Source: Ascidiella aspersa
Taxonomy: Eukaryota
Direction of reading: 5' to 3'
Length of the DNA stretch: 64,000 nt
Assembly (NCBI GenBank): GCA_963924565.1
Contig: OZ004608.1
Location: forward strand, 6,882,001-6,946,000
Position 1 is the stretch's first letter, and every line of letters begins with the position of its first letter. A program made the position numbers and the translations under genes. Shown here piece by piece: positions 21,801 through 51,024 of this stretch. The notes beneath the pieces were generated by a model that saw nothing but the letters and a program-made list of their open reading frames with translations, did no database searches and was not told the DNA's origin.

Positions 21801-23002
21801 GAGTCCAATTCTGTTGGTCTGCAAAGAAGAGCGGATCCCAGGACAGACGAAGGCTACAGCTCGCTTGAGATTGTAAGACCTGGCGAATCGGCATACGACT
21901 CGAATGTCCAATACAGCTCTATCAACACAACAGAGAGAAAGCCTTTAGGGCCTGACCAGGATGCGGTCTATTCTGCTGTGAACAAAGGTAAAATGGCTAA
22001 CTTTTGTAGAAGTGGGTCCTAATAAAATATATACAATATATATATATGTATATATATATGTTGTATTTCAATTAGCAGAAGCCTAATATTTTCTCTCGAT
22101 AGCAAAACCGATATTTTTGGTAAAAATAACTATATTTATTATTAAGCAAAATAGATGAAATTGAAATGTACAAACGTATTGTTTTCTAGGATATATAAGA
22201 AATAAATTTTCCTTAGCCTATCGAGGTTTAGTTTTTTCTTCAGTTAACAGCGTACCATGTTTAATAACTGTAACTTTTAGACTAAAATCAATGCATTCTA
22301 ACGCAAATTAGAGGTAAAATTGTTATATAAATTTGCTATTAAGTCTGTGGTGTACCATACTATGGTATCCTACTAGTTGAGTATGCTATACTATCGTATA
22401 ACATATATCTATATACTGCCATTTGGCATCTCATATTGGCTCTGATTTTAATTGTATTTCCTCAATGCAAGAAATAATCAATCAATTATTGAATATCTCT
22501 AATTGATTAATTGAAATTATAGCCTATTTATATAAGCCTTTGTTTTAAAATGTTCTTTTTTTTTTCAAACAACATACTCATAACAGTAACACCCGAACCA
22601 TTTAAAAATACAAACCTTTAGTAAGAATTTTTAAATGATATATATATATCAACTGTTAATAAACGGCGCCAAAACTTTTCGTCAGAAACAAAGAAAAAGT
22701 CCAATGAAAAGGAAACTGTGGCTAACCCGCTTTACGGAGAAACGAACAGTTACACTGAGAAGGAAACTGTGGCTAACCCGCTTTACGGAGAAACGAACAG
22801 TAACACTGAGAAGGAAACTGTGGCTAACCCGCTTTACGGAAAAACGAACAGTTACACAGAGAAGGAAACTGTGGCTAACCCTCTTTACGGAGACACGAGC
22901 CCCTCCTCGGAGAAGGAAACTGTTGCCAACCCTCTCTATGCTTCCTCCAACCACGAGCAGCATTCAACGCCTGATGATTTGTACTCGCAAGTAAAAAAGT
23001 GA
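15842..23002 (+). CDS. Gene 4: type I TM C-type lectin receptor, QPD/WYD head, duplicated Thr-rich stalk exon, tail with 5x NPLY repeat
   Basis: Exons 15842-16049, 16120-16341 (YIGL, QPD, WYD), 17977-18069 and 19357-19446 (EIPTTVLPTTHIATTTST..., both phase 1-1), 19939-20017 (TM LPIVIGAAGGGLLLICLIVFVILM), 20624-20673 (CRRR), 21724-21987 (AIYNAV, DEGYSSL, VQYSSI, AVYSAVNK), 22686-23002 (ANPLY repeats, DDLYSQVKK*). The join of head exons to downstream exons is inferred. Confidence 0.8.
17558..17689 (+). pseudogene. Collapsed lectin-gene 5' relic (copy 1)
   Basis: Acceptor-like acag then ATG: MNLKYFSARLGVKTWHLALQYKIEAATV* (resembles exon 1 TWH..Y.I), fused out of frame to INCDLKLGRYICQRFI plus a GT donor (exon 2 end). 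Confidence 0.55.
19028..19159 (+). pseudogene. Collapsed lectin-gene 5' relic (copy 2)
   Basis: MNLKYFSVLLSVKTWHLALQYKIEAATVST / INCDLKLGRYICQRSI|gt. Confidence 0.55.
22706..22940 (+). repeat. Coding VNTR, 51-bp unit (EKETVANPLYGxxNSYT), 5 units
   Basis: Directly repeated gagaaggaaactgtggctaacccgctttacgga.... Paralogous arrays at ~33049-33232 (4 units), ~41687-41820 (3) and ~50830-50962 (3). Confidence 0.95.
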
Positions 23003-26000
23003 TAAAACACCTATTTTGCGATTTCTCATAAAGTTCCTTTGTGATACGTAATAAGAATATCAAAGTCCATACACACACACGCATATATGATATAAACACT
23101 AATAATCAGGGGCTCTTTCTATGTTCAAAATGAATATAGAGTTATTCCAAACGTCAAAATGCTACCTACTTTTGTTTGGGCTTTGATTTTATTACTACGT
23201 CCATCTACAACCTCCAACCATTACTTATCTTAAGAGTTATTCCAAACGTCAAAATGCTCCCTCTTTTTGTATGGGCTTTGGTATTCTTATCACGTGCTAC
23301 TACAACCTTCAACTATTATGCTGCAAAGTTTTGTTGCAATCTTTTTTAGTTTTCCCTTATGTTTAACCATCATCGAAACATTTAGTGCAACGTAACGGTA
23401 AATCTGGAATGCTGACAGTAAACACTGTCAAATTTCGTTCATGAGTATTGTTGCACCCAAGTCAAGTATTGTTTAGAAATATAGTGTTGAACACCAAATC
23501 ACCGCAACTAAAATTGCATGGGAGTTTTACTTGTGTCTTGCAATGCACTTGAGTAATTCGATGCTTCGCAGAAACATTTGGTAATACTATATGGAGAAAC
23601 CGCAAGTGGGCTTCTTTCCAATTAAACATCTTTTAGGGTTTTTTAACATCGGGTATGGTTGGGATTATGTGAGATTATAACAAATCAATTTGTCATAAAT
23701 CTGGTTTCACTGGCACAAAAACATTACACTAGCCCGCTGTCTTTAGCGTAAAATCCATTACAGGAGATATTAAGCGATTTTTCAATGTCTGTAACGTATT
23801 GCTTGCATTATTCTTGTACTGTGATATAAAATTACTGTATTTTGTCAAGTTATTGCATTACCGTTATTTTATAAATTTTTTATTTTTTAGTATTTTTTTT
23901 TCAACATATTCTTGCGGTGATCTATTGTGTTCTTCTTCACTTCGCCAAACATTGGTGAACAGTTAATCGATTTGTTTGTATTTGATTCAGCTTTACCATA
24001 TTCTATTGCCTTTCGTCGCTTTACACTGCATTTTGTCCCTATCTGTTGTTTTTTATTTGTTCAGTGTTCGATTTCGCTTTTCACCAAACCGCAAACCTAC
24101 TTCTAAACACACTTAGATTAACTTTTAGTCTAGTGTTACACTATTTTACAATTTTGTTGAGTGTTTTTGATTTCAATGATTTTATTTATCTATATTTTTA
24201 ACACTGAACATATCCGCCGTATAACCGATTAGTGCGTTTTGGTTAAAAACAAGAAGGCAGATGTTTAATTTCTGAATGGTTGCCATAATTTAGTTAAGTT
24301 ATAAGTTGATGTATTTAAAAAAAATAAATGAAAGGCAGGACGCATGGTTTGCTGGGCGTTTATTAAAGTCTACTAATACATTCCTAAAAAAACACGGAAA
24401 TAATACATAAAGTAGTGTAATATAGCAAAGTATTCACCAACCAGACTATCTGATATTAATACATGCATTTCCAAAGACAAAGTGCACGTAGTACATTTAG
24501 GCAGCAATGAAACCTTTGCCTTATTATGTGCTAGTTCAAATGTTCGTATGTCAGAAAGGAAGAGCCATGGCGTGACTGTGTAGTGACGTTTACTCTACAG
24601 ATACCGAGTATCTAAATTCCAGCTACCATAAGACGCTCTGCTTTCCGGGTGTATTCCATCACAGTCCTTGTAACGACTTAATGACTTTACATTATGACAA
24701 CGAGTAGGTCCTATCATATTTTGTACTCTAATCAACGCAAAAGTTTAACTGCCTATACGTGTAAACGCCGCTCGCAGTTCAAAGCTTTTGCTACATTATC
24801 TGCGCTTTTACTTAAAACAGAAACTGAGGTACAAAACATGAAGCGTCTTTAGAAATTTGGTGCACAACATTGAACAAACAACCATTTCGCAATATTTATT
24901 TTCTTTTAATAACGGTGAAATGTTAAGCACAACTACCGCTGTCTTTTATAGCATTTCAGTTAGAGCAAAAACTTTTTTGAACGTCATTGTTAAAAGTGTT
25001 GTTTATAGGAAAAGTTGCCATTTCGTCAACTCGATGTTAATTAGTCCTTTCTGGTATGAAACTTTAATTGAGTCGTTAAACACATTTTTACGGCAGTACA
25101 CACAGTCGGCCGGAGCGTCTTTGGTTTTGCAAGAATTATCATTGACTTGTTATGCTTCGTAATAGTGGCTATTATGATTTAAAATTTTGGCTCACATGCC
25201 TAGCACGTGTTTCTGTGCAATATATCTCTCATTTGTTAAATGAAGGAAGTTTGCTGATCAACCACTGAACAAAATCACCTGTTGACATTTACTTTTTTGA
25301 GTGAAAAATTTTAGCCGCCAATTGCGCAAACTTCATAAATAGCGGTCAGTTTTTTCTGTATTATTTTTCTCTACAACACTTCCCAAATACTTTGAATGTT
25401 TCGAAAACCGCCTGTTTGGCACATCAAATAAAATTTTGAATTTATAGCACTTTATTTCAGTGACGTTACTATCGTATCTGTTAATAAAATGAAACTACAA
25501 ATTTTATGTGTTTTTAGTCAAAAAAGTGAGTTGGGCAGCTTCAGTTAACGCCTATTGACTTCCGTCCTTTGGAAACTATCTCGTTCTTAAATATTGTTTA
25601 ATAAAAGTCAAAAATGTTGCAAAAATTATGCTAACAAAAAATGAAGAACATTAAATGGCGTTCGAAAAAAAGTATACCGGTTTCAAAGCGCTACACAATG
25701 TACATTTTTCCATGCAATGGAAGTTCTGAACAGGCTAAATCTTGCGTTCAAACTCAAGCAAGTCTGACGTGTACTACAAACAGGTAACGTCGCAGGAAAT
25801 TAGGTAATTAATTAACCAGGTTCCATACAGTCTTAACATGAGTTTGTATTACGTTCAGGATGCCTATCCCATTAGCTTTATGCGGACCAACTACAAAATC
25901 GTATATATAGTTACTCCTCTGTAATTCAACGCAATTAAATTCCGTGGTAATAACAACAGCTTTGAGAACAAGCAAAATTATTAAAATTTATCTTAACCTT

Positions 26001-26859
26001 TATAGGTGCTATTTTCACTGGATACTATTTAGGCGTATATTGCAAACAACGAAAACAGCACAAAAAAATGCTTTTCAAATAAAACTGAAAGTTGATTTCC
26101 ATGAATAACGACGTTTACAATAGGCTAGCTCTTACAAATAGTATATATACCAACATACTTGAGTACACTATGCACGGATTTGTAATGTAGCTTGATAGTA
26201 AATTGCAAGCCAAAAAGGTCGAGTAGATCGACAGCATCTTGATTAAGACGTTTCGATACGAGCTTGTATCATCTTCATGTCACATTAACTGATCATTAAT
26301 TATCTTAACTTTTTCTCGCAAAGTAATGATTAGTTGAAGGTCTTTGCAAGGTGAAAGCCAGACAAGAGGTATTTGTTTTGTTGTAAAACGCCTAAACGAT
26401 AACTATATTAACACTTATGAACGACATTTAAATATTAAATAGTCAAAATAAAAGTCTAAAACAGTTAGTGGGAATGTTTATATTTTTATGATTTCTTTCA
26501 GTACCCCTTTGGGCAATAGAAATGCCAACTGACCTCTCCTATATAATGTTTGATTTTTAATTTAAATACGCCAAAAAAGATTTATTAAAATGCTCATGCC
26601 GACACTTTTGTGTTTATACAGTTATGTACAACCTCGGGAAGAGATGTTTTGTACTTTATAGAAATATTGCTTCGTAACAATTTGTCGTAATATGATTCAA
26701 ATTATAATTCCCAACCAATAATGGTAAACTTCTTAACAACAGTCGTTGGTCTACATCACTCAGTGCTGCATAAAATCTCAATATTGTTTGTACAATTACG
26801 TAAAATGAAGAGTATGAAAAACTGATCGTAAAATGTCATTTATCGTTATCGCTTATAAG

Positions 26860-27415
26860 CAGGGTTACCATTTGCTCAGACCAAATAAGCACCTACTCCA
26901 AAAAAATAAGCACGCTACTAAAGATCAGGAACAGATCCAGGACTCCGGGGGTGATATCCAAGGTTTCAGAAATAACGTTATAATATAAAATGAAAACTTG
27001 AAAAACAGCTATTTTTGTTTGCGCAAAACGTAGCTTAATCGCGCGAAGCAAAAAAAATGTGTTTATTAGGTTAAAATTGGCAAGTCCTCACGTCAAGCCG
27101 AAGGTTTACTTGATTGCTAAAGCAACCTACCACGCTTTTATAGGCTAGAATGTACTTTTTAGATTTGGAATAAACAATCACAATCCATTGTTATTATGTA
27201 ATTTAATGCATTACTGTTATAATCTGGGTTAAATAACTGGATAAATATAAATAAATAATTGATAAAGAACGCTTTTAGAAATTAAAATAAGACAAACTAA
27301 GCACATAACTCTAAAATAAGCACGTTTCTTAGAAATAAGCACATTGGCGTTTTCTAAGACACTGCGCCCAAAAATAAGCACAAATCTTAGAAATAAGCAC
27401 GGTATGGTAACCCTG
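26860..27415. mobile_element. hAT-like MITE with subterminal AAATAAGCAC repeats
   Basis: Perfect 12-bp TIR CAGGGTTACCAT...ATGGTAACCCTG; 8-bp TSD cttataag; empty site in the paralogous unit at ~37353. Confidence 0.92.
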
Positions 27416-27611
27416 CTTATAAGGTTACGTTTTTCTGTAAATCTAAAATAAACAAATATAAAAATATCTAAATTTGGTGATTTATTGTTAAATATTAACT
27501 CAACGTTCGTTTTACGACGTTGGAAATTTTAACTCTATTTTTCGGCGTTTGAGGTCGCGCGTTAAACCGGCAAACTAAATAAAACACAAACAGAAAAAGT
27601 TTAGGCTACGG

Positions 27612-28531
27612 CAGGAGTCGGCAACCCCTGGTACGCGTGCCAAAAGTGACACGCGAGATGATTTTACAGGGCACGCCAAATGATTTAACGCGCTCGTTAT
27701 ATCACCTTAAAAATTCAATATCACATCATAACTTTATTATTACATGACTAACACTAGCTAACTAAACTATTGCACACATTTCTAGTTCGATCTGCAGTGT
27801 TTGTGTCACAAATTAGTGTCTTAAATGTTGTATTTAATATTATTTTTTGTGGGCGTTATACTAGTTGTCCACCACTAATCGTTTGTATTAAGCACAATGC
27901 CCTAAAATTGGTGCGATGTTTACTGCGGTAAAGCAGGGCATTTTACATTGAAGTACGCACGTGTGTTTTTGTATGTCTGAGAAACCTAGCTTAAAGCGAA
28001 ACTGATAGCTAACACTTTTATAGCTACCTGCTGAAAAACGTGGAATTGTATTCCAAAATAGCGGTCACAGTATTGTGTTCGTGACAGTGTGTTTTTTCAC
28101 ACGGTTAAGGTATCTTTACAGAATTTAACTTATGAAATTAGGTTTAATGGCGTCTCCCAAGATACGTAACTTAGATGTCAGATCACAGCAGGGTTGCGGA
28201 GTCGGGCTCGGGCTCGGGACTCGAGTAAGACTAGGTAAAACCGTAAAACTACCCGAGCTCGACATGTGCGCATGTGCTTAACCAAATTTCGAAACTATTT
28301 TCCATGAGCCCTACGAAGGATTGCGGATTATCCATCTTGTTTCAGTTACGTAAATCGGTGAAGTATACAGGCTGTTGAGTCTGAGTCGGACTCGGGTTGT
28401 TTTTAACCGACTCCGCAGCCCTGGTTGCTAGGGCAAAACCAAACATAGAAAAATGTTTGGCACACGAGTTGTTGATATTTTAAAATTATTCTTAATTTGG
28501 CACACTGTATGCGAAAGGTTGCCGAACCCTG
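27612..28531. mobile_element. hAT-like non-autonomous element (host of a nested MITE)
   Basis: TIRs CAGGAGTCGGCAACC...GGTTGCCGAACCCTG; flanks ggctacgg/ggctacaa; empty site ttaggctacgatg at ~37530, ~46297 and ~55706. Confidence 0.85.
28189..28423. mobile_element. Nested MITE
   Basis: TIRs CAGGGTTGCGGAGTCGG...CCGACTCCGCAGCCCTG; TSD not clean (gatcacag/gttgctag). Confidence 0.75.
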
Positions 28532-29204: not shown

Positions 29205-29285
29205 AATGAAAAATCTAGCCTTGAGTAAGTTTCGAGCTCACGACCTCGGGCAAAACGGGGACTGTCGCGCGACCGAATTCGTTGA
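29205..29285 (-). mobile_element. Possible tRNA-derived SINE head relic (repeated upstream of genes 6-8)
   Basis: Reverse strand reads ...gaggtcgtgagctcgaaacttactcaaggc, resembling a tRNA T-arm/B-box (GGTCGTGAGTTCGAA). No full cloverleaf is visible. Confidence 0.35.
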
Positions 29286-29478: not shown

Positions 29479-29690
29479 TGATTAAGTAAAAGGCGATATT
29501 TCAATGGCATGGATAGTACAATGATTAAGTAAAAGGCGGTATTTCAATGGAATAGATAGTACAATGATTAAGTAAAAGGCGGTATTTCAATGGAATGGAT
29601 AGTACAATGATTAAGTAAAAGGCGGTATTTCAATGGAATGGATAGTACAATGATTAAGTAAAAGGCGGTATTTCAATGGCATGGATAGTA
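29479..29690 (+). repeat. 43-bp minisatellite, 5 copies, upstream of the gene 5 ATG
   Basis: Unit tgattaagtaaaaggcggtatttcaatggaatggatagtacaa at 29479, 29522, 29565, 29608 and 29651. Confidence 0.95.
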
Positions 29691-30042: not shown

Positions 30043-33000
30043 ATGGTCACACTAGTCAATGTGATGATTGCATTTACTACTGCGACAAGTTCATTTGCGA
30101 CGTGGCACCAATTGGAAGACTTTCAATACAGCATTCAAAGCAATGTAAAGCGAACGTTTAAGGAAGCTGCTACGGCTTGCAGGGAAATGAATGCATCTCT
30201 GGTTAAAGTCAACTCGTCGATTATCCAAATGTTCTTAGCTCAGAAAATTAAAACAGGTAGCTTAAACAATTAAAGAGCGAATCAAACGTAACTCATATTT
30301 ATCAATTAGACAAATCATTCCTAAAGCTTAGTACTATTCTGGGTCACTATCCATTTTACGGAAGTTAGAATAATGTAGGCCTATTCGTTCGAACAAAATT
30401 GAGTCCCGAGTAAGACCAAAATAGAAATACACAATGTCGGAAAAACTTGTAAAGCGGAATTAAACAAGCCTTTCAGAAAACAACCTAAACGGACAGAGTA
30501 CGATTTTAACAATCTCTACTCTAAACACACATAGGGTATTACTGAGTCTTTTGTTTAACTATTATGTAAGGTGTTATCTAAAATTTCGATTTAAATATTG
30601 AGCTTTATTGTTTTTAGTGTGCGTTTCATTGTTCAGGTTCACGCACTTACTATATTGGATTAACGAGTGGAACGGATGACAAGTTCAAATGGTTGGACGG
30701 ATCAAGTTTAGCTTATACGAAATGGGAAAAGGGGGAGCCAAATGATTGGTGGTGGAATGAGGATTGTGCCGTGATGAAAGAGAGTCCAGAATTTTTTTGG
30801 AATGATATATCATGCAGCCGAAAAGAAAAATACATTTGTCAGAGACCAATTGGTATGTATACTGTATAGGCTATCCTTTACGTAGATTGTGAATGACCTA
30901 CGTTATACCAACAACTAAATATAATTATAAAGAAAGATTAAATTATTAATTTCGTTTCTGAAAAAAAACATTGCTTTCCCTAAATTATTGCCTGTTCGTT
31001 GGCCGAAACAAAAATATTATTTCTGATAGATTACCGAATCACTTAAACCCGATTGTGTGAAATGAAACATGCCTGCATAAAGTGCCTGATGAAGTGTCTC
31101 GGAAAATGCATACATGATTGATTGATTGTGTATAAACAACGTAAAGTTATAAATATCTAGCCTTGGAAATATCTACCACCACCCATGTTGTTGTATCCAA
31201 TAGCTTTGTTAGTTACGTTCATATTGAAGGTTTAGCATTTAATATTTTGTTTTGTAGTTTTATGTATTTACGTTGGTTTACAGAGCTACTTAGCCCTACA
31301 ACAGCTTCGTCGACTCATCAAACAACTGTTGAAGGCTTCACTAATGCGGTGATAAACCCCACAACTGTTAACAATAATGCACTAACCAAGAACGTTCCAA
31401 AAGGTAGCCATTGACTTCACTTTCTCAAACGTAATGTACAGTAAAACGACAATTCATCAAAATTATTTGGTTTCGAAAACAGTTTAACCCTCTTTGTAGA
31501 ACAAACTAAATATGAGCCCACTATCACGGATATGACGTCATACGAAGGAAAAACAATAAGCAGCAGATCGTCATCAGGTCACGTGTTTTTCTATGCAATT
31601 TGGCAAAAGTTAATTCGCATTGAAAGCGTAGCATTAATTGCGGAAGCATTTTGATTTTGCAAAACGATTATAGCCTTATTTGTAACGTAAAGGCTCTACT
31701 TGCAGACGGTCTTACTGAGACGTATGCAAAGAAATCTGGATCATCAACTGTTGAATAATTGCACCGATCTCCGGAGTTGTGCTTCTTTGCCTTGCAGCTC
31801 TTGCTGTAGCATTGTGCATAAGGTGGGTTGAACTGCTTATAACATGTGTAGGTTAAGAGTCTAAATTGTTTAAAGGCGTCATGTTCCTATTTTCAGGAAG
31901 AGCAGAGCGGTCGAACAACAACCAAGCATTAATCACGATGAAGGTTAGTGTTACATTCCCAGGTAGCCTATAGGACAATGCTCGTATATCTCGGCTGCTA
32001 AAAGCTCAAATTGCCTCTGCTAAAAGTTCAATATGAATTAGCCGGATAGTCAATAGTGTTGTCCGACACTTGTTATTCTATTCCGATACAAACAGATAAA
32101 CGCCGAGAAGCACGTTTATTGTAAACATGCTCTTTCTGAGAAATTTACGTTTCATAGTGGAAAACGCTCACAGTGGCAAAATGCTTTGTTCTGACTTAAA
32201 AATGCTTTGTTCTGACTTAAAATTTAGCATAGTTTAGTATACGATATGTTACGATACCACGCTACTATCGTACGAGAACAAATACTAGTATCGAGGATCG
32301 GTTGTTGTAATGGCACTCGACATTTCGAAAAGTGACCATGTTTGTTTCACATCCGGCCGTAAATGATTTCATCCGAAGTTGTTTTAACTGAAATAGTTGT
32401 CGGACTTGAAATATGTAAATGGGAAAAAACAAATCTTATTCTAAATTTGCTGATAGGTAATCAGGCCACGTCTCGGAATGTGAACGAAATGCCTGCAAAC
32501 AACGAATACTCGTCTTTAAACTTGGAAACTACTTCTCAACCTCACAGCGGTGGTCAAAATGCGTCTGAAACTGGCAACGATTATTCGCATCTTAACTTAT
32601 CCGGAATAGCAACTGGAAATGTCACCTCACAAGAACAGGCGGTGTACTCCGTGGCAACGATTGGTAAGCCTTCAACATAGATGTCCTAGGAATTACATTC
32701 ATCTAAAATCAACTAGCTTGGGATAGTGCAACGGCGGGCCTGCAAACTGAAGTCAAACATATTGACTCTGATTTTAATTGTATTTCCTCAAGACAAGAAA
32801 TAATCAAGAAGAAACAATCAATCAATTATTGAATATCTCTAATTAATTAATTGAAATTATAGCCTATTTTTATAAGCCTTTGTTTTAAAATATATTTTTT
32901 TTCAAACAACATACTCATAACAGTAACACCCGAACCATTTAAAAATGAAAACATTTAGTAAGAATTTTTAAATTACATATATATATATATATCAACTGTT

Positions 33001-33294
33001 AATAAACGGCGCCAAAACTTTTCGTCAGAAACAAAGAAAAAGTCCAATGAAAAGGAAACTGTGGCTAACCCGCTTTACGGAAAAAGGAACAGTTACACTG
33101 AGAAGGAAACTGTGGCTAACCCGCTTTACGGAGACAAGAACAGTTACACTGAGAAGGAAACTGTGGCTAACCCGCTTTACGGAGACACGAGCCCCTCCTC
33201 GGAAAAGGAAACTGTTGCCAACCCTCTCTATGCTTCCTCCAACCACGAGCAGCATTCAACGCCTGATGATTTGTACTCGCAAGTAAAAAAGTAA
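30043..33294 (+). pseudogene. Gene 5: EPN/WND lectin receptor with a 1-nt deletion giving a stop just before the TM (null allele or secreted form)
   Basis: Exons 30043-30256, 30637-30852 (EPNDWWWNEDC...WND), 31284-31403, 31500-31577, 31706-31822 (GTT GAA TAA at 31750-31758 versus GTT GTA ATA ATT in genes 6-8), 31897-31943, 32457-32663, 33029-33294. Confidence 0.85.
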
Positions 33295-38455: not shown

Positions 38456-38582
38456 TGATTAAGTAAAAGGCGATATTTCAATGGCATGGATAGTACAATG
38501 ATTAAGTAAAAGGCGGTATTTCAATGGAATGGATAGTACAATGATTAAGTAAAAGGCGGTATTTCAAATGGCATGGATAGTA
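38456..38582 (+). repeat. 43-bp minisatellite, 3 copies
   Basis: Same unit as at 29479; starts at 38456, 38499 and 38542. Confidence 0.9.
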
Positions 38583-38933: not shown

Positions 38934-41881
38934 ATGGTCACACTAGTCAATGTGATGATTGCATTTACTACTGCGACAAGCTCATTTGCGATGTGGCACC
39001 AATCGGACAACTTTGAATACAGCATTCAAAGCAATGTAAAGCGAACGTTTAAGGGAGCTGCTACGGCTTGCAGGGAAATGAATGCATCTCTGGTTAAAGT
39101 CAACTCGTCGATTATCCAAATGTTCTTAGCTCAGAAAATTAAAACAGGTAGCTTAAACAATTAAAGAGCGAATCAAACGTAACTCATATTTATCAATTAG
39201 ACAAATCATTCCTAAAGCTTAGTACTATTCTGGGTCACTATCCATTTTACGGAAGTTAGAATAATGTAGGCCTATTCGTTCGAACAAAATTGAGTCCCGA
39301 GTAAGACCAAAATAGAAATACACAAAGTCGGAAAAACTTGTAAAGCGGAATTAAACAAGCCTTTCAGAAAACAACCTAAACGGACAGAGTACGATTTTAA
39401 CAATCTCTACTCTAAACACACATAGAGTATTACTGAGTCTTTGGTTTAACTATTATGTAAGGTGTTATCTAAAATTTCGATTTAAATATTGAGCTTTATT
39501 GTTTTTAGTGTGCGTTTCATTGTTCAGGTTCACGCACTTACTATATTGGATTAACGAGAGGAACGGATGACAAGTTCAAATGGTTGGACGGATCAAGTTT
39601 AGCTTATACGAAATGGGAAAAGGGGGAGCCAAATGATTGGTGGTGGAATGAGGATTGTGTCGTGATGAAAGACAGTCCAGACTTTTTTTGGAATGATATA
39701 TCATGCAGCCGAAAAGAAAAATACATTTGTCAGAGACCAATTGGTATGTATACTGTATAGGCTATCCTTTACGTAGATTGTGAATGACCTACGTTATACC
39801 AACAACTAAATATAATTATAAAGAAAGATTAAATTATTAATTTCGTTTCTGAAAAAAAACATTGCTTTCCCTAAATTATTGCCTGTTCGTTGGCCGAAAC
39901 AAAAATATTATTTCTGATAGATTACCGAATCACTTAAACCCGATTGTGTGAAATGAAACATGCCTGCATAAAGTGCCTGATGAAGTGTCTCGGAAAATGC
40001 ATACATGATTGATTGATTGTGTATAAACAACGTAAAGTTATAAATATCTAGCCTTGGAAATATCTACCACCACCCATGTTGTTGTATCCAATAGCTTTGT
40101 TAGTTACGTTCATATTGAAGGTTTAGCATTTAATATTTTTGTTTTGTAGTTTTATGTATTTACGTTGTTTACAGAGCTACTTAGCCCTACAACAGCTTCG
40201 TCGACTCATCAAACAACTTTTGAAGGCTTCACTAATGCGGTGATAAACCCCACAACTGTTAACAATAATGCACTAACCAAGAACGTTCCAAAAGGTAGCC
40301 ATTGACTTCACTTTCTTAAACGTAATGTACAGTAAAACGACAATTCATCAAAATTATTTGGTTTCGAAAACAGTTTAACACTCTTTGTAGAACAAACTAA
40401 ATATGAGCCCACTATCACGGATATGACGTCATACGAAGGAAAAACAATAAGCAGCAGATCGTCATCAGGTCACGTGTTTTTCTATGCAATTTGGCAAAAG
40501 TTAATTCGCATTAAAAGCGTAGCATTAATTGCGGAAGCATTTTGATTTTGCAAAACGATTATAGCCTTATTTGTAACGTAAAGGCTCTACTTGCAGACGG
40601 CCTTACGGAGACGTATGCAAAGGAATCTGGATCCTCAACTGTTGTAATAATTGCATCGATCTCCGGAGTTGTGCTTCTTTGCCTTGCAGCTCTTGCTGTA
40701 GCATTGTGCATAAGGTGAGTTGAACTGCTTATAACATGTGTAGGTTAAGAGTCTAAATTGTTTAAAGGCGCCATGTTCCTTTTTTCAGGAAGAGCAGAGC
40801 GGTCGAGCAACAACCAAGCATTAATCACGATGAAGGTTAGTGTTACATTACCAAAGTATAGGACAATTCTCGCATATCTTGCCTTCTAAAAGCTCAAATT
40901 GAATTAGCCGGATGGTCAATAGTGTTGTTCGACACTTCTTATTCTATTCCGATACAAATATATAAACCCCGAGAACCACGTTTATTGTTAACATGCTCTT
41001 TCTAAGAAATTTACGTTTCATAGTGGAAAACGCTCACAGTGGCAAAATGCTTTGTTCTGACTTAAAAACGCTTATTTAGCATAGTTTAGTATACGATATG
41101 TAACGATACCACGCTACTATCGTACGAGAACAAATACTATAGTATCGAGGATCGGTTGTTGTAATGGTAATCGACATTTCGAAAAGTGACCAGGTTTGTT
41201 TCACATCCGGCCGTAAATGATTTCATCCGAAGTTGTTCATTTGTGTTTTAAGCAACTATATGTGTTATTATTTAACTAAGTTAAGTACATAAAAATTGAT
41301 GACATTTTAATTGAAATAGTTGTCGGAAACAAATCTTATTCTAAATTTGCTGATAGGTAATCAGGCCACGTCTCGGAATGTGAACGAAATGCCTCCAAAC
41401 AACGAATACTCGACTTTAAACTTGGAAACTACTTCTCAACCTCACAGCAGTGGTCAAAATGCGTCTGAAACTGGCAACGAATATTCGCATCTTAACTTAT
41501 CCGGAATAGCAACTGGAAATGTCAACTCACAAGAACAGGCGGTGTACTCCGTGGCAACGATTGGTAAGCCTTTAACATAGATGTCCTAGGAATTACATTC
41601 ATTTCAAATTACATATATATATATATATATCAACTGTTAATAAACGGCGCCAAAACTTTTCGTCAGAAACAAAGAAAAAGTCCAATGAAAAGGAAACTGT
41701 GGCTAACACGCTTTACGGAAAAAGGAACAGTTACACTGAGAAGGAAACTGTGGCTAACCCGCTTTACGGAGACAAGAACCCCTCCTCGGAGAAGGAAACT
41801 GTTGCCAATCCTCTCTATGCTTCCTCCAACCACGAGCAGCATTCAACGCCTGATGATTTGTACTCGCAAGTAAAAAAGTGA
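38934..41881 (+). CDS. Gene 6: intact EPN/WND type I TM lectin receptor, tail with YxxL motifs, NPLY repeats and C-terminal LYSQVKK
   Basis: Exons 38934-39147, 39528-39743, 40175-40294, 40391-40468, 40597-40714 (TM VVIIASISGVVLLCLAALAVALCI), 40789-40835, 41357-41563 (NEYSTL, NEYSHL, AVYSVA), 41667-41881 (NTLY, NPLY x2, DDLYSQVKK*). Confidence 0.9.
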
Positions 41882-43817: not shown

Positions 43818-46800
43818 GTTCGATTTCGCTTTTCACGAAACCGCAAACCTACTTCTAAACACACTTAGATTAACTTTTAGCCTAGTGTTGCACAATTTTA
43901 CAATTTTTTTGAGTTATTTTGATTTCAATGATTTTATTGATCTATATTTTTAACACTGAACATATTAGCCGTATAACCGATTAATGAGTTTTGTTTAAGA
44001 ACTAGAAGGTAGATGTTTTTTTGAATGGTTGCTATAATCTAAGTAAGTTATAAGTTGATGTATTCAAGAAAAACAAAATAAATAAAATGCGGGACGCATG
44101 GTTTGCTGGTCGTTTATTACTGTATATTATTACAAACCTAAAAATATTTACGAAAATAATACATAAAGTAGTGTAATACAGCTAAGTATTCACCAACCAA
44201 AGTCTGATATTAATATATGCATTTCCAAAGACAAAGTGCGCGTAGTACTTTTAGGCAGAAATGAAACCTTTGCTTCATTATGTGCTAGTTCAAAGTGTTC
44301 GTATGTCAGAAAGGAAGATCCATGGCGTTTTTGAACGTCATTGTTAAAAGTGTTGTTTATAGGTAAAGTTGCCATATGGTCAATTCGATGTTAATTAGTC
44401 CTTTCTGGTATAAAACTTTAATTGAGTCGTTAAACACATTTTTACGGCAGTACCCACAGTCGGCCGGAGCGTCTTTGGTTTTGCAAGAATTATCATTGAC
44501 TTGTTATGCTTCGTAATAGTGGCTATTATGATTTAAAATTTTGGCTCACATGCCTAGCACGTGTTTCTGTGAAATATATCTCTCATTTGTTGATTGAAGG
44601 AAGTTTGCAGATCAACCACTGAACAAAATCATCTGTTGACATTTACTTTTTTGAGTGAAAAATTTTAGCCGCCAATTGCGCTAACATTATAAATAGCGGT
44701 CAGTTTTTCTGCTATATTTTTCTCTACAACACTTCCCTAATGCTTCAAATGTTTCGCAGACCGCCTGTATGTCACATCGAATAAAATTTTGCATTCATAG
44801 CACTTTATTTCAGTGACGTTACCATCTTATCTATTCATAAAATAAAACTATAATATTTATGTGTGTTTCAATAAAAAAAAATATTTTGCTTTGTCAGTTG
44901 GGCAGCTTCAGTTAAAGACTATTTAACTTTTGTCATTTGGAAACAATCTCGTTTTAAAATATGTTTAAACGAAAGGCAAAAATAATGAAAATTATAGAAA
45001 TAAACAATAAAGAACAATAAATGTGCCCGTAAAGAAATGTATATCGGTCTCAAAACGCTGCACGATGCTGTTGCTACCAAGCAAACCAGGCTAAATCTTG
45101 CGTTCAAACTCAAGCATGTTTGACGCACTACAAACAAGTAACGTCACAGGATATTAGGTAATTAATTAACCAGGTTCAATACACTCTTAACATGAGTTTG
45201 TATTACGTTCAGGATGCCTATTCCACTTTATGCGGACCAACTACAGAATCGTATATAGTTACTCCAATGCAACGCGATTAAATTCCGTGGTAAATACAAC
45301 AGATTTAAAAACAAGCAAAATTATTAAAATTCATCTTAACCTTGATAGGTGCTATTTTCACTCGATATTATTTAGATGTATATTGCGAACAACCGAAACA
45401 GCAGAAAAAAAATATTTTCAAATAAAACTGAAAGTTGATTTCCATGAATAACGACGTTTACATTAAGTTGTTAATATATAGGCTATAGCTCTTTATATTT
45501 CGTGAATCCCAGTGTCATTAATTATCTTATCTTGTAACAAAGTAATGGTTAGTTGAAGCTCTTTGCAAGGTGACAGCCAGGCAAGAGATATTTGTTTTAT
45601 TGTAAAACGCCTGAACGAAATTCATTAAGTTATTGTACAACACCTAAACGATAGGCCTATACTTATTAACACTTATCAACGACATTTAATTATTAAATAG
45701 TTAAAATAAAAGTCTAAAACAGCGAGTTGGAATGTTTATATTTTTAGGATTTCTTTCAGTACCCCTTTAGGCAATAGAAATGCCAATTAGCCTGTCCTAT
45801 ATAATGTTTGAGTTTTAGTTTAAATACGCCAAAAAAAGATCCATTAAAGTGCTCATGCCGACACTTTTTGAGTTTGTACAGTTATATACAACCTTGGGAA
45901 GTAATGTTTTGTACTTTTATAGAAATATTGCTCCTTAACAAGTTGTCTTAATATGGTTAAAATTTAAATTTCCAGCCAATAATGGTAAACTTTTTAACAA
46001 CAGACGTTGGTCTATTTCACTCAGTGCTGCATAAAATCTCTACATTGTTCGTGCAATTATGTAAAATGAAGAGTACGAAGAACTGATCGTAAAATGTTAT
46101 CAATTGTTATCGCGTAAAATTGCGGTTTTCTTATGTGAAATAACCCAAAATAAAAATAGCTAAAGTTGTTGATTTGTTCGTAAATATTAACTTATGGTTC
46201 GTTTTACGAGGTTGGCAATTTTAACTTCATTGTTCTGCGTTTGAGGTTGAGCGTTAAACCGGCCAACTAGATAAAATACAAGCAGAAACAGTTTAGGCTA
46301 CGATGTCAATTGGATTGGTTACATCTACTAATTTCGCCCTTAGCACATTACTCTGCAATATAAATTTGATGGAAAGCTTGCCCTATACGCCATATGAGGA
46401 AAATTAGGGCTCTTATTATTTTTTTTTATATAAGTAACGCTTCACGATTTATATGCCAGGGTTATTCATGGACTTCTGTAACCTTGATGAAGACACTCGT
46501 AGAACGAACTGAACACAAGATTCACGTAGAACGAACTGAGCGCGAAAGGTTCCTCAATAGCATTACTCACAAGACGTGCTGGTTCGTTGTGACTGATTCA
46601 ATGTTAAGCCTGTTCAAAAATATTCTTTCAAGTTGTGGAAATGACACATCGCACGGGTATAGCAATCACAGTAGCTTAACCAGTTTTAGGCGATTTTCAT
46701 GCAGCCATTCAGTTATTAAGTAAATAGTGATAATCTTCAAAACGTAATTTCTTCGTGCTTCACTTGACTAAATTACCTGAAGGTATAGACGTTAAGTTAT

Positions 46801-47230
46801 TGAATCATTCCTATACACATTGTGTGATTAGAACCTTATGAAGTCCCACCGACCAACGATAACGGCAAGCATTACATAGTCCACCAGATGCCTTCGGAAT
46901 AGTCTATCAAGCACAGTAAGCCTTATCAGGATTATCGTACCAGAAAAGCAAGAAAAGAAAAATCTAGCCTTGAGTAAGTTTCGAGCTCACGACCTCAGGC
47001 AAAACGGGGACTGTCGCACGACCGAATTCGTTAATAGTTATACCCTATAAATTGTTAGATCTGCCCCTGGTAGCAGACGCTAGCGGTTTATCAATTAAAT
47101 AAACAAATTATCAAGTATTGCTAATGAAGAAAGTCGTACAAATTCATTTGAAACTTAGCACGGAAGAAGAGGCGACCAAAAACCATACTTTGCTGTAAGT
47201 TACGAATTTCAGCCTGTGCCTCACATATAT

Positions 47231-47355
47231 TGATTAAGTAAAAGGCGGTATTTCAATGGAATGGATAGTACAAGATTAAGTAAAAGGCGGTATTTCAATG
47301 GAATGGATAGTACAATGATTAAGTAAAAGGCGGTATTTCAATGGCATGGATAGTA
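47231..47355 (+). repeat. 43-bp minisatellite, 3 copies
   Basis: Same unit as at 29479. Only a single copy occurs upstream of gene 8 (~56644). Confidence 0.9.
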
Positions 47356-47707
47356 TGAGTGTTGTTGAACCTCAGTTGTTAAATATTAAATTAAAATTTA
47401 TTCTATTTCATAACGAAGTTAATATTCAATTAATCATACTTTGTGATGAAGCAAAAACTTCCGTGAGCTTTGTGTTGCGGCTTGCTATAAAGGTTATAAC
47501 CTGTCTAGCATACACACTATATAAATTGAAAGAATACGCTTCGGTGTTACCAAGTGATTGTACTGCACTAGAACAATATATGACTGTGGGCGAATAGTTT
47601 GTCTGAAAGAATGACCGCATTACGTCACTGCTGATGTAGTTAGTAGTCTGTACAGCTTTACCCACGGCATTCATTTGCGATTCTCAGCAACTTCTGGTTG
47701 GTTTAAG

Positions 47708-50700
47708 ATGGTCACACTAGTCAATGTGATGATTGCATTTACTACTGCAACAAGCTCATTTGCGATGTGGCACCAATCGGACAACTTTGAATACAAAACT
47801 GAAAGCAATGGAAAACGAACGTTTAAGGGAGCTTCTACGGCTTGCAGAGAAATGAATGCAACTCTGGCCAAAGTCAACTCTTCGGTTATCCAAATGTTCT
47901 TAGCCCAGAAAATTAAAAGAGGTAGCTTAAACAATTAAAGAGCGAATCACACGTAACTCATATTTATGAAATAGACAAATCATTCCTAAAGCTTAGTACT
48001 ATTCTGGGTCACTATCCATTTTACGGAAGTTAGAATAACGTAGGCCTAATCGTTCGAACAAAATTGAGTTCCGAGTAAGACCAAAATAGAAATACACAAA
48101 GTCGGAAAAACTTGTAAAGCGGAATGAAACAAGCCTTTCAGAAAACAACCTAAACGTACAGAATACGATTTTAACAATCTCTACTCTAAACACACAAAGG
48201 GTATTATTAAGTCTTTGGTTTAACTATTTTGTTGGTTAGTAAGGTGGTATCTAAAGTTTCGATTTAAATATTGAGCTTTTATTGGTTTTAGTGTGCGTTT
48301 CATTGTTCAGGTTCAAGCACTTACTATATTGGATTAACGAGAGGAACGGATGACAAGTTTAAATGGTTGGACGGATCAAGTTTAGCTTATACGAAATGGG
48401 AAAAGGGGGAGCCGAATGATTGGCTGTGGAATGATGAGGATTGTGCCGTGATGCAAGACAGTCCAGACTTTCTTTGGAATGATATATCATGCAGCCGAGA
48501 AGAAGCATACATTTGTCAGAGACCAATTGGTATGTATGCTCTGTGGGCTACCATCAAGATTTTGAATGACCTAAGTAATATCAGCAACTAAATATATATA
48601 TAAAGCAAAATTAAAGTTCTAGTTTTGTTTCTGCAAAAATATTGTTCCTCCTAAATAATTGCCTGTTTGTTAGACGAAAAGCAATATTCTTTCTGATAGA
48701 TTACAGGATTAGTCATGCACGATTTTGTATACCGAAACAAAATTTCACACAATACGTGAAATGTCAAATTGTGATTGTGTGATTGTGTATATAAATTTGT
48801 ACACATATCAGAACGGTACACAATCCATAATAATCTATAACCTTCGGGTTTTAACCAAAATGATTCCATATCCTAATAAATCTCTACAAATATAGTAAGG
48901 CTAGAAATATGTAGCCTTAGAAATATCTACCACCACCCCATGTTGTTGTATCCAATAGCATTGTTAGTTGTGTTCATATTGAAGGTTTAGCATTTAACAT
49001 TTTTGTTTTGTAGTTTTATGTATTTACGTCGGTTTACAGAGCTACTTAGCCCTACAACAGCTTCGTCGACTCATCAAACATCTGTTGAAGGCTTCACTAA
49101 TGCGGTGATAAACCCCACAACTGTTAACAATAATGCACTAACCAAGAACGTTCCAAAAGGTAGCCATTGACTTCACTTTCTCAAACGTAATGTACAGTAA
49201 AACGACAATTCATCAAAATTATTTGGTTTCGAAAACAGTTTAACCCTCTTTGTAGAACAAACTAAATATGAGCCCACTATCACGGATATGACGTCATACG
49301 AAGGAAAAACAATAAGCAGCAGCTCGTCATCAGGTCACGTGTTTTTCTATGCAATTTGGCAAAAGTTAATTCGCATTAAAAGCGTAGCATTAATTGCGGA
49401 AGTATTTTGATTTTGCAAAACGATTATAGCCTTATTTGTAACGTTAAGGCTGTACTTGCAGACGGCCTTACGGAGACGTATGCAAAGGAATCTGGATCCT
49501 CAACTGTTGTAATAATTGCATCGATCTCCGGAGTTGTGCTTCTTTGCCTTGCAGCTCTTGCTGTAGCATTGTGCATAAGGTGGGTTGAACTGCTTATAAC
49601 ATGTGTAGGTTAAGAGTCTAAATTGTTTAAAGGCGTCATGTTCCTTTTTTCAGGAAGAGCAGAGCGGTCGAGCAACAACCAAGCATTAATCACGATGAAG
49701 GTTAGTGTTACATTACCAAAGTATAGGACAATTCTCGCATATCTCGCCTTCTAAAAGCTCGAATTGAATTAGCCGGATGGTCAATAGTGTTGTCTGACAC
49801 TTATTATTCTATTCCGATACAAATATATAAACGCCGAGAAGCACGTTTATTGTTAACATGATCTTTCTAAGAAATTAACGTTTCATAGTGAGAAACGCTC
49901 ACAATGGAAAACGCTCACAGTGGCAAAATGCTTTGTTCTGACTTAAAAACGCTTATTTAGCATAGTTTGGTAAACGATATGTAACGATACCACGCTACTA
50001 TCGTACGAGAACAAATACTATAGTATCGAGGATCGGTGGTTGCAATGGTAATCGACATTTCGAAAAGTGACCAGGTTTGTTTCACATCCGGCCGTAAATG
50101 ATTTCATCCGAAGTTGTTCATTTGTGTTTTAAGCAACTATATGTGTTATTATTTAACTAAGTTAAGTACATAAAAATTGATGACATTTTAATTGAAATAG
50201 TTGTCGGAAACAAATCTTATTCTAAATTTGCTGATAGGTAATCAGGCCACGTCTCGGAATGTGAACGAAATTCCCGCAAACAACGAATACTCGTCTTTAA
50301 ACTTGGAAACTACTTCTCAACCACACAGCGGTGGTCAAAATGCGTCTGAAACTGGCAACGATTATTCGCATCTTAACTTATCCGGAATAGCAACTGGAAA
50401 TGTCACCTCACAAGAACAGGCGGTGTACTCCGTGGCAACGATTGGTAAGCCTTTAACATAGATGTCCTAGGAATTACATTCATCTAAAATCAACTAGCTT
50501 GGGATAGTGCAACGGCGGGCCTGCAAACTGAAGTCAAACATATTGACTCTGATTTTAATTGTATTTCCTCAAGACAAGAAATAATCAAGAAGAAACAATC
50601 AATCAATTATTGAATATCTCTAATTAATTAATTGAAATTATAGCCTATTTATATAAGCCTTTGTTTTAAAATATATTTTTTTTCAAACAACATACTCATA

Positions 50701-51024
50701 ACAGTAACACCCGAACCATTTAAAAATGAAAACATTTAGTAAGAATTTTTAAATTACATATATATATATATATCAACTGTCAATAAACGTCGCCAAAACT
50801 TTTCGTCAGAAACAAAGAAAAAGTCCAATGAAAAGGAAACTGTGGCTAACCCGCTTTACGGAAAAAGGAACAGTTACACTGAGAAGGAAACTGTGGCTAA
50901 CCCGCTTTACGGAGACAAGAACCCCTCCTCGGAAAAGGAAACTGTTGCCAACCCTCTCTATGCTTCCTCCAACCACGAGCAGCATTCAACGCCTGATGAT
51001 TTGTACTCGCAAGTAAAAAAGTGA
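47708..51024 (+). CDS. Gene 7: intact EPN/WND type I TM lectin receptor, NPLY x3 and LYSQVKK tail
   Basis: Exons 47708-47921, 48311-48529 (EPNDWLWNDEDC...WND), 49040-49159, 49256-49333, 49462-49579, 49654-49700, 50238-50444, 50810-51024. Confidence 0.9.

What the first reader, a model, noticed from the sequence alone, without database searches (positions are those of the whole stretch)
22686..51024. Tunable NPxY array: a 51-bp coding VNTR gives 5/4/3/3 ETVANPLY units in the tails of genes 4-7
Seen: 17-aa unit EKETVANPLYGxxNSYT; copy number differs per paralog and one unit in gene 6 is mutated to NTLY. Known: NPxY binds PTB/FERM domains (Shc, Dok, Dab, talin) and acts as an endocytic signal. 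Val at -5 fits the hydrophobic-x-NPxY Shc PTB preference, and NPLY is the integrin beta3 motif. Inference: adaptor valency or internalisation rate is set by repeat slippage. Tandem arrays of NPxY in a lectin receptor are unusual to my knowledge.
Basis: partly seen in the sequence, partly recalled or inferred. Interest (0 to 1): 0.78.

Follow-up and report, generated by a model that had tools for sequence, protein, structure and literature searches.

The report
Repeated NPLY motifs in lectin-receptor tails
Four neighbouring sea-squirt lectin receptor genes end in three to five tandem copies of a short conserved tail motif of the kind that usually recruits adaptor proteins inside the cell, a design resembling the vertebrate receptor layilin, but no RNA or binding data yet show that it is used.

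Summary
A 51-bp in-frame tandem repeat sits in the last coding exon of four C-type-lectin receptor genes. It gives 5, 4, 3 and 3 units of EKETVANPLY plus a 7-residue linker; one unit in gene 6 reads NTLY.

The reading frame is supported three ways:
- The exon phases of genes 6 and 7 chain cleanly from ATG to stop.
- Seven of 8 variable core columns are synonymous third positions.
- pN/pS against a distant paralog is 0.35, against 2.3 and 1.4 in the other frames.

The motif is not confined to these genes. A second lectin subfamily 0.24-0.42 Mb away carries a 60-bp unit (KEMVANPLYD...) in 3-5 copies. A SUEL-lectin family on another chromosome carries 51-bp units (EVDN[VI]LYG...).

Weaknesses:
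- The one RNA run laid gave no reads on gene 7.
- No copy-number polymorphism between individuals was seen, so "VNTR" and "tunable" are unshown.
- Gene 5, the 4-unit copy, has a frameshift in its transmembrane exon.

A repeated NxxY tail in a lectin receptor has a precedent: layilin binds talin through ESGFVTNDIY. I read this as a new variant of a known kind, most likely a multivalent PTB-type docking or uptake array. The scan's earlier notes cover this lectin array but not the NPLY repeat.

The parts
22686..23002 (+). Gene 4 last coding exon (E8) including the TGA stop. Five 51-bp units start at 22706, 22757, 22808, 22859 and 22910, followed by HSTPDDLYSQVKK*.
   Evidence: Acceptor is ttttcgtcag|AA.
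33029..33294 (+). Gene 5 E8 including the TAA stop. Four units start at 33049, 33100, 33151 and 33202.
41667..41881 (+). Gene 6 E8 including the TGA stop. Three units start at 41687, 41738 and 41789. The first reads NTLY (41705-41716, ACG codon at 41708-41710).
50810..51024 (+). Gene 7 E8 including the TGA stop. Three units start at 50830, 50881 and 50932.
21724..21988 (+). Gene 4 cytoplasmic exon E7, with several Tyr motifs. It differs in sequence from the E7 of genes 5-7. The donor AAAG|gtaaaa is phase 1, the same phase as in genes 5-7.
32457..32663 (+). Gene 5 E7 (NEYSSLNL, NDYSHLNL, AVYSVATI), phase-1 donor ATTG|gtaagc.
41357..41563 (+). Gene 6 E7. The intron to E8 is only 103 nt because of a deletion of about 262 nt relative to genes 5 and 7.
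50238..50444 (+). Gene 7 E7.
19939..20017 (+). Gene 4 transmembrane exon (…PIVIGAAGGGLLLICLIVFVILM…). The exon or exons between it and E7 were not modelled.
31706..31822 (+). Gene 5 transmembrane exon, 117 nt instead of 118. A 1-nt deletion near 31753 gives stops in frame and breaks the phase chain.
40597..40714 (+). Gene 6 transmembrane exon, intact.
49462..49579 (+). Gene 7 transmembrane exon, intact.
47708..48529 (+). Gene 7 exons E1 (47708-47921: signal peptide and first half of the lectin domain) and E2 (48311-48529: second half, with EPN and WND).
   Evidence: PF00059 matched the gene 5 equivalents. PDB matches.
38934..39743 (+). Gene 6 exons E1 (38934-39147) and E2 (39528-39743) of the C-type lectin domain.

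Best explanation
The 51-bp repeat is real coding sequence. It forms the C-terminal cytoplasmic end of type I, single-C-type-lectin-domain receptors. It encodes 3 to 5 evenly spaced (17-residue) copies of a selected decapeptide, EKETVANPLY, which belongs to the hydrophobic-x-N-P-x-Y class.

Most likely each copy is a docking site for a PTB-type domain. Candidates are Shc-, Dab-, Numb- or GULP/CED-6-like PID domains, or a FERM F3 domain. The tail would then act as a multivalent adaptor platform for ligand-triggered uptake (endocytosis or phagocytosis) or signalling.

Copy number has changed repeatedly by in-register unequal exchange or slippage between units. The exon has also been moved as a cassette onto a different receptor body (gene 4).

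Shown here: the repeat, the frame, purifying selection on the core, the position behind a TM exon, and parallel arrays in other lectin-receptor families. Inferred: cytoplasmic exposure, PTB binding, and any effect of valency.
For: Frame and gene model:
- Genes 6 and 7 have 8 exons with AG/GT borders. The phases chain from ATG to stop with no internal stop, and this puts E8 in the NPLY frame.
- Gene 4's different E7 has the same phase-1 donor.

Selection:
- In 15 units the core has 8 variable columns. Seven are at codon position 3 and all 7 are synonymous. The linker varies evenly, 8/9/7.
- Gene 7 tail against L005 tail: pN/pS is 0.35 in this frame, against 2.32 and 1.41, with stops, in the other two.
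- The same peptide VANPLY is written with different codons in other subfamilies: GTA GCT AAT CCT TTG TAT and GTC GCC AAT CCG TTG TAC, against GTG GCT AAC CCG CTT TAC here.

Genome-wide pattern:
- 40 sites code for VANPLY against 16 for the reversed control pattern. Thirty of them lie in the lectin array at C2 6.46-7.04 Mb.
- Family B has C-type-lectin heads and a 60-bp unit in 5, 4, 4, 3+1 (NPLN) and 3 copies.
- Family C has a SUEL lectin domain upstream. Its stalk, TM helix and 3-5 [KR]ExVxNx[LI]Y motifs lie in one open exon, which shows directly that such arrays follow a TM helix.

Motif class:
- Conservation is N-terminal to the Tyr while +2 and +3 vary. That matches PTB specificity (PMC3507883 passage).
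- The genome encodes PID-type and IRS-type PTB exons.

Precedents: layilin, layilin/beta3 binding to talin F3, Jedi-1/CED-1/Draper NPXY binding GULP, mannose receptor FENTLY.
Against: - No transcript evidence. The RNA run X9 (about 6 in 100 of it read, 7.8 million reads) laid 3 reads, all on a downstream repeat and none on gene 7's exons.
- No predicted protein in the two protein libraries carries this tail. One search gave a best match of 6.3e-24 to unrelated repeats and none at 1e-30 or below. One search gave nothing.
- Gene 5 is broken.
- Genes 5-7 are 92-97% alike, introns included. They are young copies, so part of the core's constancy is shared descent.
- No adaptor was identified and no binding was tested.
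- Earlier notes of the scan report no expression data for this megabase array.
Confidence: 0.55

Rival explanations
1. Layilin-like cytoskeletal anchor. The repeated VxNxLY motifs bind the F3 (PTB-like) lobe of talin or another FERM protein and tie the lectin receptor to actin at ruffles or phagocytic cups. They would not recruit Shc/Dab/GULP-type adaptors.
For: Layilin is a type I C-type-lectin receptor whose tail holds three ESG(F/W)V and two N(D/E)IY repeats, and ten residues (ESGFVTNDIY) suffice for talin binding (PMC2132847 passages). Layilin WVENEIYY binds talin F3, and a beta3 chimera WVENPLY binds 20-fold better (PMC4003243 passages). The units here share V at -5, N at -3, L/I at -1 and Y at 0. 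IRS-type PTB exons, the Pfam family that talin F3 is recalled to fall in, exist in the genome.
Against: The aromatic residue at -6 is Thr here, and Met, Ile or Glu in families B and C. That residue (W in layilin and beta3, F or W in LH2) fills a talin pocket. The acidic residue at -4 is Ala here. Orthology to layilin was not tested. The lectin exon's best solved matches are mannose-receptor family members and mannose-binding protein.
Confidence: 0.15
2. Phosphotyrosine scaffold read by SH2 domains. The tyrosines are Src-family kinase substrates, and each pY recruits SH2 proteins, as in multi-tyrosine immune-receptor tails.
For: The tail is rich in tyrosine motifs: E7 has YSSL, YSHL and YSVA, and E8 ends in LYSQV. 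Earlier notes of the scan describe this array as lectin receptors with tyrosine-motif tails.
Against: SH2 domains read residues C-terminal to pY. Here +2 and +3 vary freely (ET, KT, DT, KR, DK, SS), while -9 to -1 are fixed. This is the PTB pattern.
Confidence: 0.12
3. The array has no present function. It is a coding minisatellite drifting in number in young, possibly unexpressed or decaying copies of an over-expanded gene family.
For: No RNA reads. Gene 5 is frameshifted. The copies are 92-97% identical including introns. Family B arrays end in a unit cut by TAA, and one unit there is NPLN.
Against: Synonymous-only change in the core. pN/pS is 0.35 against an older paralog. The motif is kept with different codons in three receptor families. 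Genes 6 and 7 have intact 8-exon frames.
Confidence: 0.12
4. The repeat is non-coding (3' UTR or intron) or is read in another frame.
For: A second + frame and the - strand are also open across the repeat. There is no transcript.
Against: The phase chain, the codon-position pattern, and stops plus pN/pS above 1 in the other frames.
Confidence: 0.03

Closest known systems
Layilin (LAYN), a talin-binding C-type-lectin receptor
   Same: It is a type I membrane protein with one N-terminal C-type lectin domain, one TM helix and a tail of about 120 residues. The tail holds internally repeated short motifs ending V-x-N-x-I-Y (ESGFVTNDIY). Several copies are present, and each is a ligand for a PTB-like domain (talin F3).
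   Different: Here the residue at -6 is not aromatic, -4 is Ala rather than Glu, and -2 is Pro. The copies form a regular 17-residue tandem array made by a 51-bp DNA repeat, and the number differs between paralogs (2 to 5). The genes belong to a megabase lineage-specific array. Orthology was not tested.
Integrin beta tails (beta3 NPLY747 and NITY759)
   Same: The identical NPLY tetrapeptide. There are two NxxY motifs per tail, read by talin, kindlin and other PTB proteins (for NPLY and talin; NITY from the listing abstract of PMC5112943; kindlin's site is recalled).
   Different: Integrins have two non-identical motifs at fixed positions, with a Trp upstream. There is no tandem array and no lectin head.
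Endocytic FxNPxY / FxNxxY signals (LDL-receptor family; mannose receptor FENTLY)
   Same: A hydrophobic residue at -5, N at -3 and Y at 0 in the tail of a type I uptake receptor. The mannose receptor is a C-type-lectin receptor, and its family gives the best solved matches to the lectin exon here.
   Different: There is one motif in the mannose receptor and two or three scattered ones in LRP1 and megalin (the latter recalled). The residue at -5 is aromatic there and Val here. The mannose-receptor family has many lectin domains plus other modules.
Engulfment receptors CED-1 / Draper / Jedi-1 / MEGF10
   Same: The tail combines NPXY, which binds the PTB adaptor CED-6/GULP and is needed for internalisation, with YxxL-type motifs (passages of PMC4055271).
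   Different: Their ectodomains are EGF-type and they have one NPXY. The two YxxL in E7 here are 21 residues apart, outside the ITAM spacing (spacing rule recalled).
Multi-NPxY proteins (KRIT1; Drosophila insulin receptor C-terminal extension; SHIP1)
   Same: Several NPxY motifs on one polypeptide. KRIT1 recruits two CCM2 molecules (title and abstract in the listing only). 'Four NPxY' occurs in PMC3895810, which was seen only in the listing and not read.
   Different: These are not periodic tandem repeats, not lectin receptors, and their copy number does not vary between paralogs.
Uncharacterised NPxYG arrays in other invertebrates
   Same: Lytechinus variegatus XP_041484661.1 has 9 NPxY, most of them as [LI][VI]DNPLYG. 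An EGF-TM protein (P0065) has 3 PNP[VI]YG units 18 residues apart behind its TM helix. One ENA cluster has members with 8 or 9 units.
   Different: The heads and linkers differ. All are predictions without names or studies. Homology as opposed to convergence is not resolved.

Membership tests
Hydrophobic-x-NPxY motif class (PTB ligand / internalisation signal) | N-P-x-Y tetrapeptide | tested here: met
   14 of 15 units are NPLY and 1 is NTLY.
Hydrophobic-x-NPxY motif class (PTB ligand / internalisation signal) | Hydrophobic residue at -5 | tested here: met
   Val in 15 of 15 units.
Hydrophobic-x-NPxY motif class (PTB ligand / internalisation signal) | Lies in the cytosolic part of a membrane protein | tested here: met
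   By gene model only. In genes 6 and 7 a signal-peptide-like start, a lectin domain and a TM exon precede E6-E8 in one phase chain. In family C the TM helix and motifs are in one open exon. No protein-level evidence.
Hydrophobic-x-NPxY motif class (PTB ligand / internalisation signal) | Bound by a PTB or FERM-F3 domain | not testable with these tools
   Only the presence of PID and IRS-type PTB exons in the genome was shown.
Layilin family | Type I protein with a single C-type lectin domain, a TM helix and a cytoplasmic tail | tested here: met
   PF00059 on E1/E2; exon models.
Layilin family | Talin-binding module ESG(F/W)V + N(D/E)IY, with an aromatic residue at -6 | tested here: not met
   V, N, L/I and Y are shared, but -6 is Thr and -4 is Ala (compared).
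Layilin family | Sequence orthology of lectin domain and tail to layilin | not tested
   No layilin sequence was available from a tool. The tail had 0 PDB matches at E up to 10. The lectin exon's best solved matches are DEC-205, FcRY, PLA2R, Endo180, the mannose receptor and mannose-binding protein.
Mannose-receptor family | Multi-lectin-domain ectodomain with Cys-rich and FNII modules | tested here: not met
   Only one lectin domain, encoded by two exons, per gene.
VNTR (minisatellite polymorphic between individuals) | Head-to-tail tandem units | tested here: met
   Period 51, 2.3-4.5 copies, 82-95% matches.
VNTR (minisatellite polymorphic between individuals) | Copy number differs between alleles or individuals | tested here: inconclusive
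   One locus (gene 7) and four runs gave no 51-bp indel or joint in 50830-50954. However, the raw DNA run had a depth of about 3 there, and its reads were mostly 95-99% alike.
CED-1/Draper/Jedi engulfment receptors | EGF/EMI-type ectodomain | tested here: not met
   The ectodomain is a C-type lectin domain plus a Ser/Thr-rich stalk.
CED-1/Draper/Jedi engulfment receptors | NPXY plus ITAM in the tail | tested here: inconclusive
   NPXY is present. E7 has YSSL and YSHL separated by 21 residues, which is longer than the recalled ITAM spacing.

The most novel reading that the evidence does not exclude
A 17-residue [KR]ExVxNx[LI]Y 'valency cassette' is a shared, portable signalling module of sea-squirt lectin receptors. 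It occurs in two C-type-lectin subfamilies and a SUEL-lectin family, with look-alikes in sea urchin and other invertebrates. Its copy number (2 to 5 or more) is repeatedly reset by unequal exchange. The number of PTB docking sites sets how strongly each receptor couples to an engulfment or adhesion adaptor. This would be an undescribed way of tuning innate receptors in an invertebrate chordate.
Probability: 0.2. Interest if true: 0.7.

Novelty: new variant of a known kind. Interest (0 to 1): 0.45.

Why it matters
If the arrays are expressed and bind an adaptor, this would be a natural dose series. Near-identical lectin heads carry 2, 3, 4 or 5 identical docking sites, and the same design arose in three receptor families of one animal.

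That would let one test directly how adaptor valency shapes uptake or signalling by innate receptors. It would also link the large, unexplained lectin-receptor expansions of sea squirts to a concrete pathway, either PTB adaptors of the GULP/Dab/Shc type or talin. And it would place layilin's repeated talin-binding motif in a wider evolutionary setting.

If the genes are silent, this is only a tidy example of a coding minisatellite in a young gene family.

Tried and rejected
- RNA evidence. One RNA run (X9) was laid on gene 7 and gave nothing on its exons. This is absence of evidence only. The run's tissue is unknown and only about 6 in 100 of it was read.
- Copy-number polymorphism. No 51-bp indel appeared at gene 7 in X8, X1 or X2. 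X1 and X2 may be the assembly's own sample, and X8 depth was about 3.
- Protein libraries. The tail exon found no near relative in 1.84 billion representatives: 57 hits at E up to 0.001 and none at 1e-30 or below. Many top hits are unrelated low-complexity repeats, for example P0001, P0007, P0046 and the bacterial P0045. The word search of proteins 57-182 aa long found nothing, and it cannot see full-length receptors. The family C exon found nothing either.
- Pfam gave nothing credible for E7 or E8. PDB gave 0 matches for the tail.
- The sigma-70 promoter and terminator scan is a bacterial tool and says nothing here. It was a wasted call.
- The DNA comparison of family A and family C units was out of register and is not used. 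Common origin against convergence of the three unit types is unresolved.
- ITAM reading of E7: rejected, because the two YxxL are 21 residues apart.
- YxxPhi (AP-2) reading of the NPLY tyrosines: rejected, because +3 is T, K, R or S. Only the terminal LYSQV fits.
- Literature. Three searches found no paper on tandem NPxY arrays in lectin receptors or ascidians. That covers only the held library.
- Gene 4's exons between the TM exon and E7 were not modelled.

Full report
**What is there.** The window (35% G+C, no N) is part of chromosome-scale contig C2 (6,882,001-6,946,000) of a 308.6-Mb genome. Earlier notes of the scan call the organism a sea squirt. The window holds about eight same-strand genes for type I membrane proteins, each with one C-type lectin domain (PF00059 on the two lectin exons).

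Tandem Repeats Finder reports a 51-bp repeat at four places. A six-frame scan finds 14 ETVANPLY sites on the + strand, split 5, 4, 2 and 3. Cutting out the units gives 15 in all (5/4/3/3). The first unit of gene 6 reads NTLY through a single C>A change at 41708.

**Gene models.** Genes 5, 6 and 7 are tandem copies, 92-97% identical including introns. I placed eight exons by splice sites and reading frames, and translated each exon on its own without joining any. For genes 6 and 7, all borders are AG/GT, the phases chain from the ATG to the stop, and no exon has an internal stop.

The order of parts is:
- a signal-peptide-like start plus the first half of the lectin domain;
- the second half of the lectin domain, with EPN and WND;
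- two Ser/Thr-rich stalk exons;
- a TM exon;
- a short basic exon;
- a tyrosine-rich exon E7 (NEYSSLNL, NDYSHLNL, AVYSVATI);
- the repeat exon E8, which ends ...DDLYSQVKK*.

Gene 4 has a different head (QPD) and a different E7, but the same phase-1 donor. It shares sequence with genes 5-7 only from about 250 bp upstream of E8 onwards.

Gene 5, the 4-unit copy, lacks one base in its TM exon. This gives in-frame stops and breaks the phase chain. It is either a pseudogene or an assembly error.

**Is the frame real?** Openness is no proof, because another + frame and the - strand are also open across the repeat. Three other tests support the frame.
- Among the 15 units the 30-nt core has 8 variable columns. 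Seven are third codon positions and all seven are synonymous; the eighth is the P>T of gene 6. The 21-nt linker varies evenly over the codon positions, 8/9/7. If 8 changes fell at random, 7 or more in one named position would have a probability of about 0.003 (my arithmetic).
- Against an older paralogous tail (L005, 61% identical), the last 29 codons give 9 synonymous and 12 non-synonymous differences, pN/pS 0.35. The other two frames give 2.32 and 1.41 and contain stops.
- The peptide VANPLY recurs elsewhere in the lectin array written with other codons.

**How copy number changed.** Genes 6 and 7 differ from gene 5 by one exact 51-bp gap. Their unit 2 (GDKNPSS) is a hybrid of gene 5's unit 2 (GDKNSYT) and unit 3 (GDTSPSS). 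Units 1-3 of gene 4 are nearly identical to each other. Related tails at C2 6.03-6.25 Mb and 7.01-7.04 Mb have two units and the same (E/D)LYSQVKK end. The array therefore grew from about 2 to 3-5 units by in-register unequal exchange or slippage, at least three times. This part is inferred from sequence.

**The motif is wider than the finding.** A genome-wide pattern for VANPLY gives 40 sites against 16 for the reversed control. Thirty of them lie at C2 6.46-7.04 Mb.
- Family B lies at 6.46-6.64 Mb on the - strand, with C-type-lectin heads. Its last exon carries a 60-bp unit, KEMVANPLYDQFKNGQAEI, in 5, 4, 4, 3+1 (NPLN) and 3 copies, and ends in a unit cut by TAA.
- Family C lies on C7 at 27.41-27.54 Mb. 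It has a SUEL-lectin exon upstream (PF02140, E 5.7e-14) and one open exon holding a mucin-like stalk, a TM helix and a tail. The tail has 3-5 [KR]ExVxNx[LI]Y motifs, including 51-bp tandem units EVDN[VI]LYGVSKV[ND]DQK and a final EEVANPLYHL*. That the SUEL exon belongs to the same gene is inferred from adjacency.

The shared consensus is [KR]-E-x-V-x-N-x-[LI]-Y. N at -3, V at -5 and L/I at -1 are kept, while Pro at -2 is not always kept.

**Outside this genome.** The representative search found no close relative: 57 hits at E up to 0.001 and none at 1e-30 or below. It did turn up uncharacterised proteins with NPxYG arrays:
- a Lytechinus variegatus protein with 9 NPxY;
- an EGF-TM protein with three units behind its TM helix;
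- a cluster whose members have 8 or 9 units.

Many other hits are unrelated repeats.

**Expression and polymorphism.** One RNA run, one raw DNA run and two contig sets were laid on gene 7 (3,801 letters).
- The RNA run gave 3 reads, all in a high-copy repeat at 51056-51300 and none on an exon.
- No run showed a 51-bp indel or joint in the array.
- The raw DNA run was shallow (about 3x). Of its 312 reads, 292 were only 95-99% alike, and it had no cover at 48516-48896. It probably reports paralogs or a diverged haplotype.

Transcription, splicing and population-level variation therefore remain untested.

**What it most likely does.** The fixed residues lie N-terminal to the tyrosine (-9 to -1, plus Gly at +1 in most units), and +2 and +3 vary. 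PTB domains read residues N-terminal to the Tyr, mostly in NPXY or NPXpY, and most prefer unphosphorylated Tyr (passage of PMC3507883). SH2 domains read the other side (recalled).

NPXY in the engulfment receptors CED-1, Draper and Jedi-1 binds CED-6/GULP and is needed for internalisation (passages of PMC4055271). The genome has PID-type and IRS-type PTB exons. I therefore favour a multivalent PTB docking array on an uptake or signalling receptor (confidence 0.55). The adaptor is unknown.

**Comparison with known systems.** The closest match in architecture is layilin. It is a type I C-type-lectin receptor whose tail carries three ESG(F/W)V and two N(D/E)IY repeats, and ESGFVTNDIY suffices to bind talin (passages of PMC2132847). 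Layilin WVENEIYY and the beta3 chimera WVENPLY bind talin F3 tightly (passages of PMC4003243). The units here share V, N, L/I and Y but lack the aromatic residue at -6 and the acidic residue at -4. The defining talin module is thus not met, and I do not file these genes as layilins.

The lectin exon's best solved matches are DEC-205, FcRY, PLA2R, Endo180 and the mannose receptor. The mannose receptor is internalised through FENTLY (passage of PMC8551360), so gene 6's VANTLY may still work. Proteins with several NPxY motifs are known: KRIT1, the Drosophila insulin receptor and SHIP1 (seen in the listing only).

Three literature searches found no description of tandem NPxY arrays in lectin receptors or ascidians.

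**Verdict.** This is a new variant of a known kind: a layilin-like design built as a copy-number-variable tandem array and repeated in three lectin-receptor families. Interest is moderate (0.45), held down by the lack of any expression or binding evidence and by one broken copy.

Noticed in passing
window 31706-31822 (near 31753): Gene 5's transmembrane exon is 117 nt, against 118 nt in genes 6, 7 and 8. The missing base creates in-frame stops, so the 4-unit gene is probably a pseudogene or carries an assembly error.
   Followed up: partly
window 29479-29690, 38456-38582, 47231-47355: A 43-bp tandem repeat a few hundred bases upstream of the ATG of genes 5, 6 and 7 also differs in copy number (4.9, 2.9, 2.9). 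It might sit in the promoter region.
   Followed up: no
window 51056-51300 (also 23138-23318): A repeat element just downstream of the last exon has enormous depth in the contig sets (tens of thousands) and many joints and loose ends. It is a high-copy dispersed or satellite repeat. The only 3 RNA reads laid fall here.
   Followed up: no
window 41564-41666: Gene 6's intron between E7 and E8 is only 103 nt. About 262 nt present in genes 5 and 7 are deleted.
   Followed up: no
window 48516-48896: The raw DNA run X8 has no cover on this gene-7-specific intron stretch, and most of its reads elsewhere are only 95-99% alike. That individual may lack gene 7 or carry a diverged haplotype.
   Followed up: no
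G000:C2:6464858-6642204 (L009, L011, L012, L015, L016, L022): A second C-type-lectin receptor subfamily has a 60-bp coding repeat, KEMVANPLYDQFKNGQAEI, in 3-5 copies. The last unit is cut by TAA (…NEMV*), and one unit has mutated to NPLN.
   Followed up: partly
G000:C7:27409736-27543940 (L008, L014, L017, L019, L020, L021): A SUEL (rhamnose-binding) lectin receptor family has stalk, TM helix and tail in one exon. The tail holds 51-bp tandem units EVDN[VI]LYGVSKV[ND]DQK and ends in ...NPLY(H/D)L* or ...NQLYEL*.
   Followed up: partly
window 32457-32663, 41357-41563, 50238-50444: E7 contains an internal duplicate, (N)EYSSLNL and (N)DYSHLNL, 21 residues apart. The tails of distant paralogs share the C-terminal (D/E)LYSQVKK, the only YxxPhi-type motif in E8.
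   Followed up: no
proteins P0003, P0058-P0063 (ENA contigs up to 2.39 Mb): In an unnamed eukaryote, members of one 90%-identity cluster carry 8 or 9 evenly spaced (14-17 residues) PNPVYG units. This shows copy-number variation of an NPxY array outside this genome.
   Followed up: no
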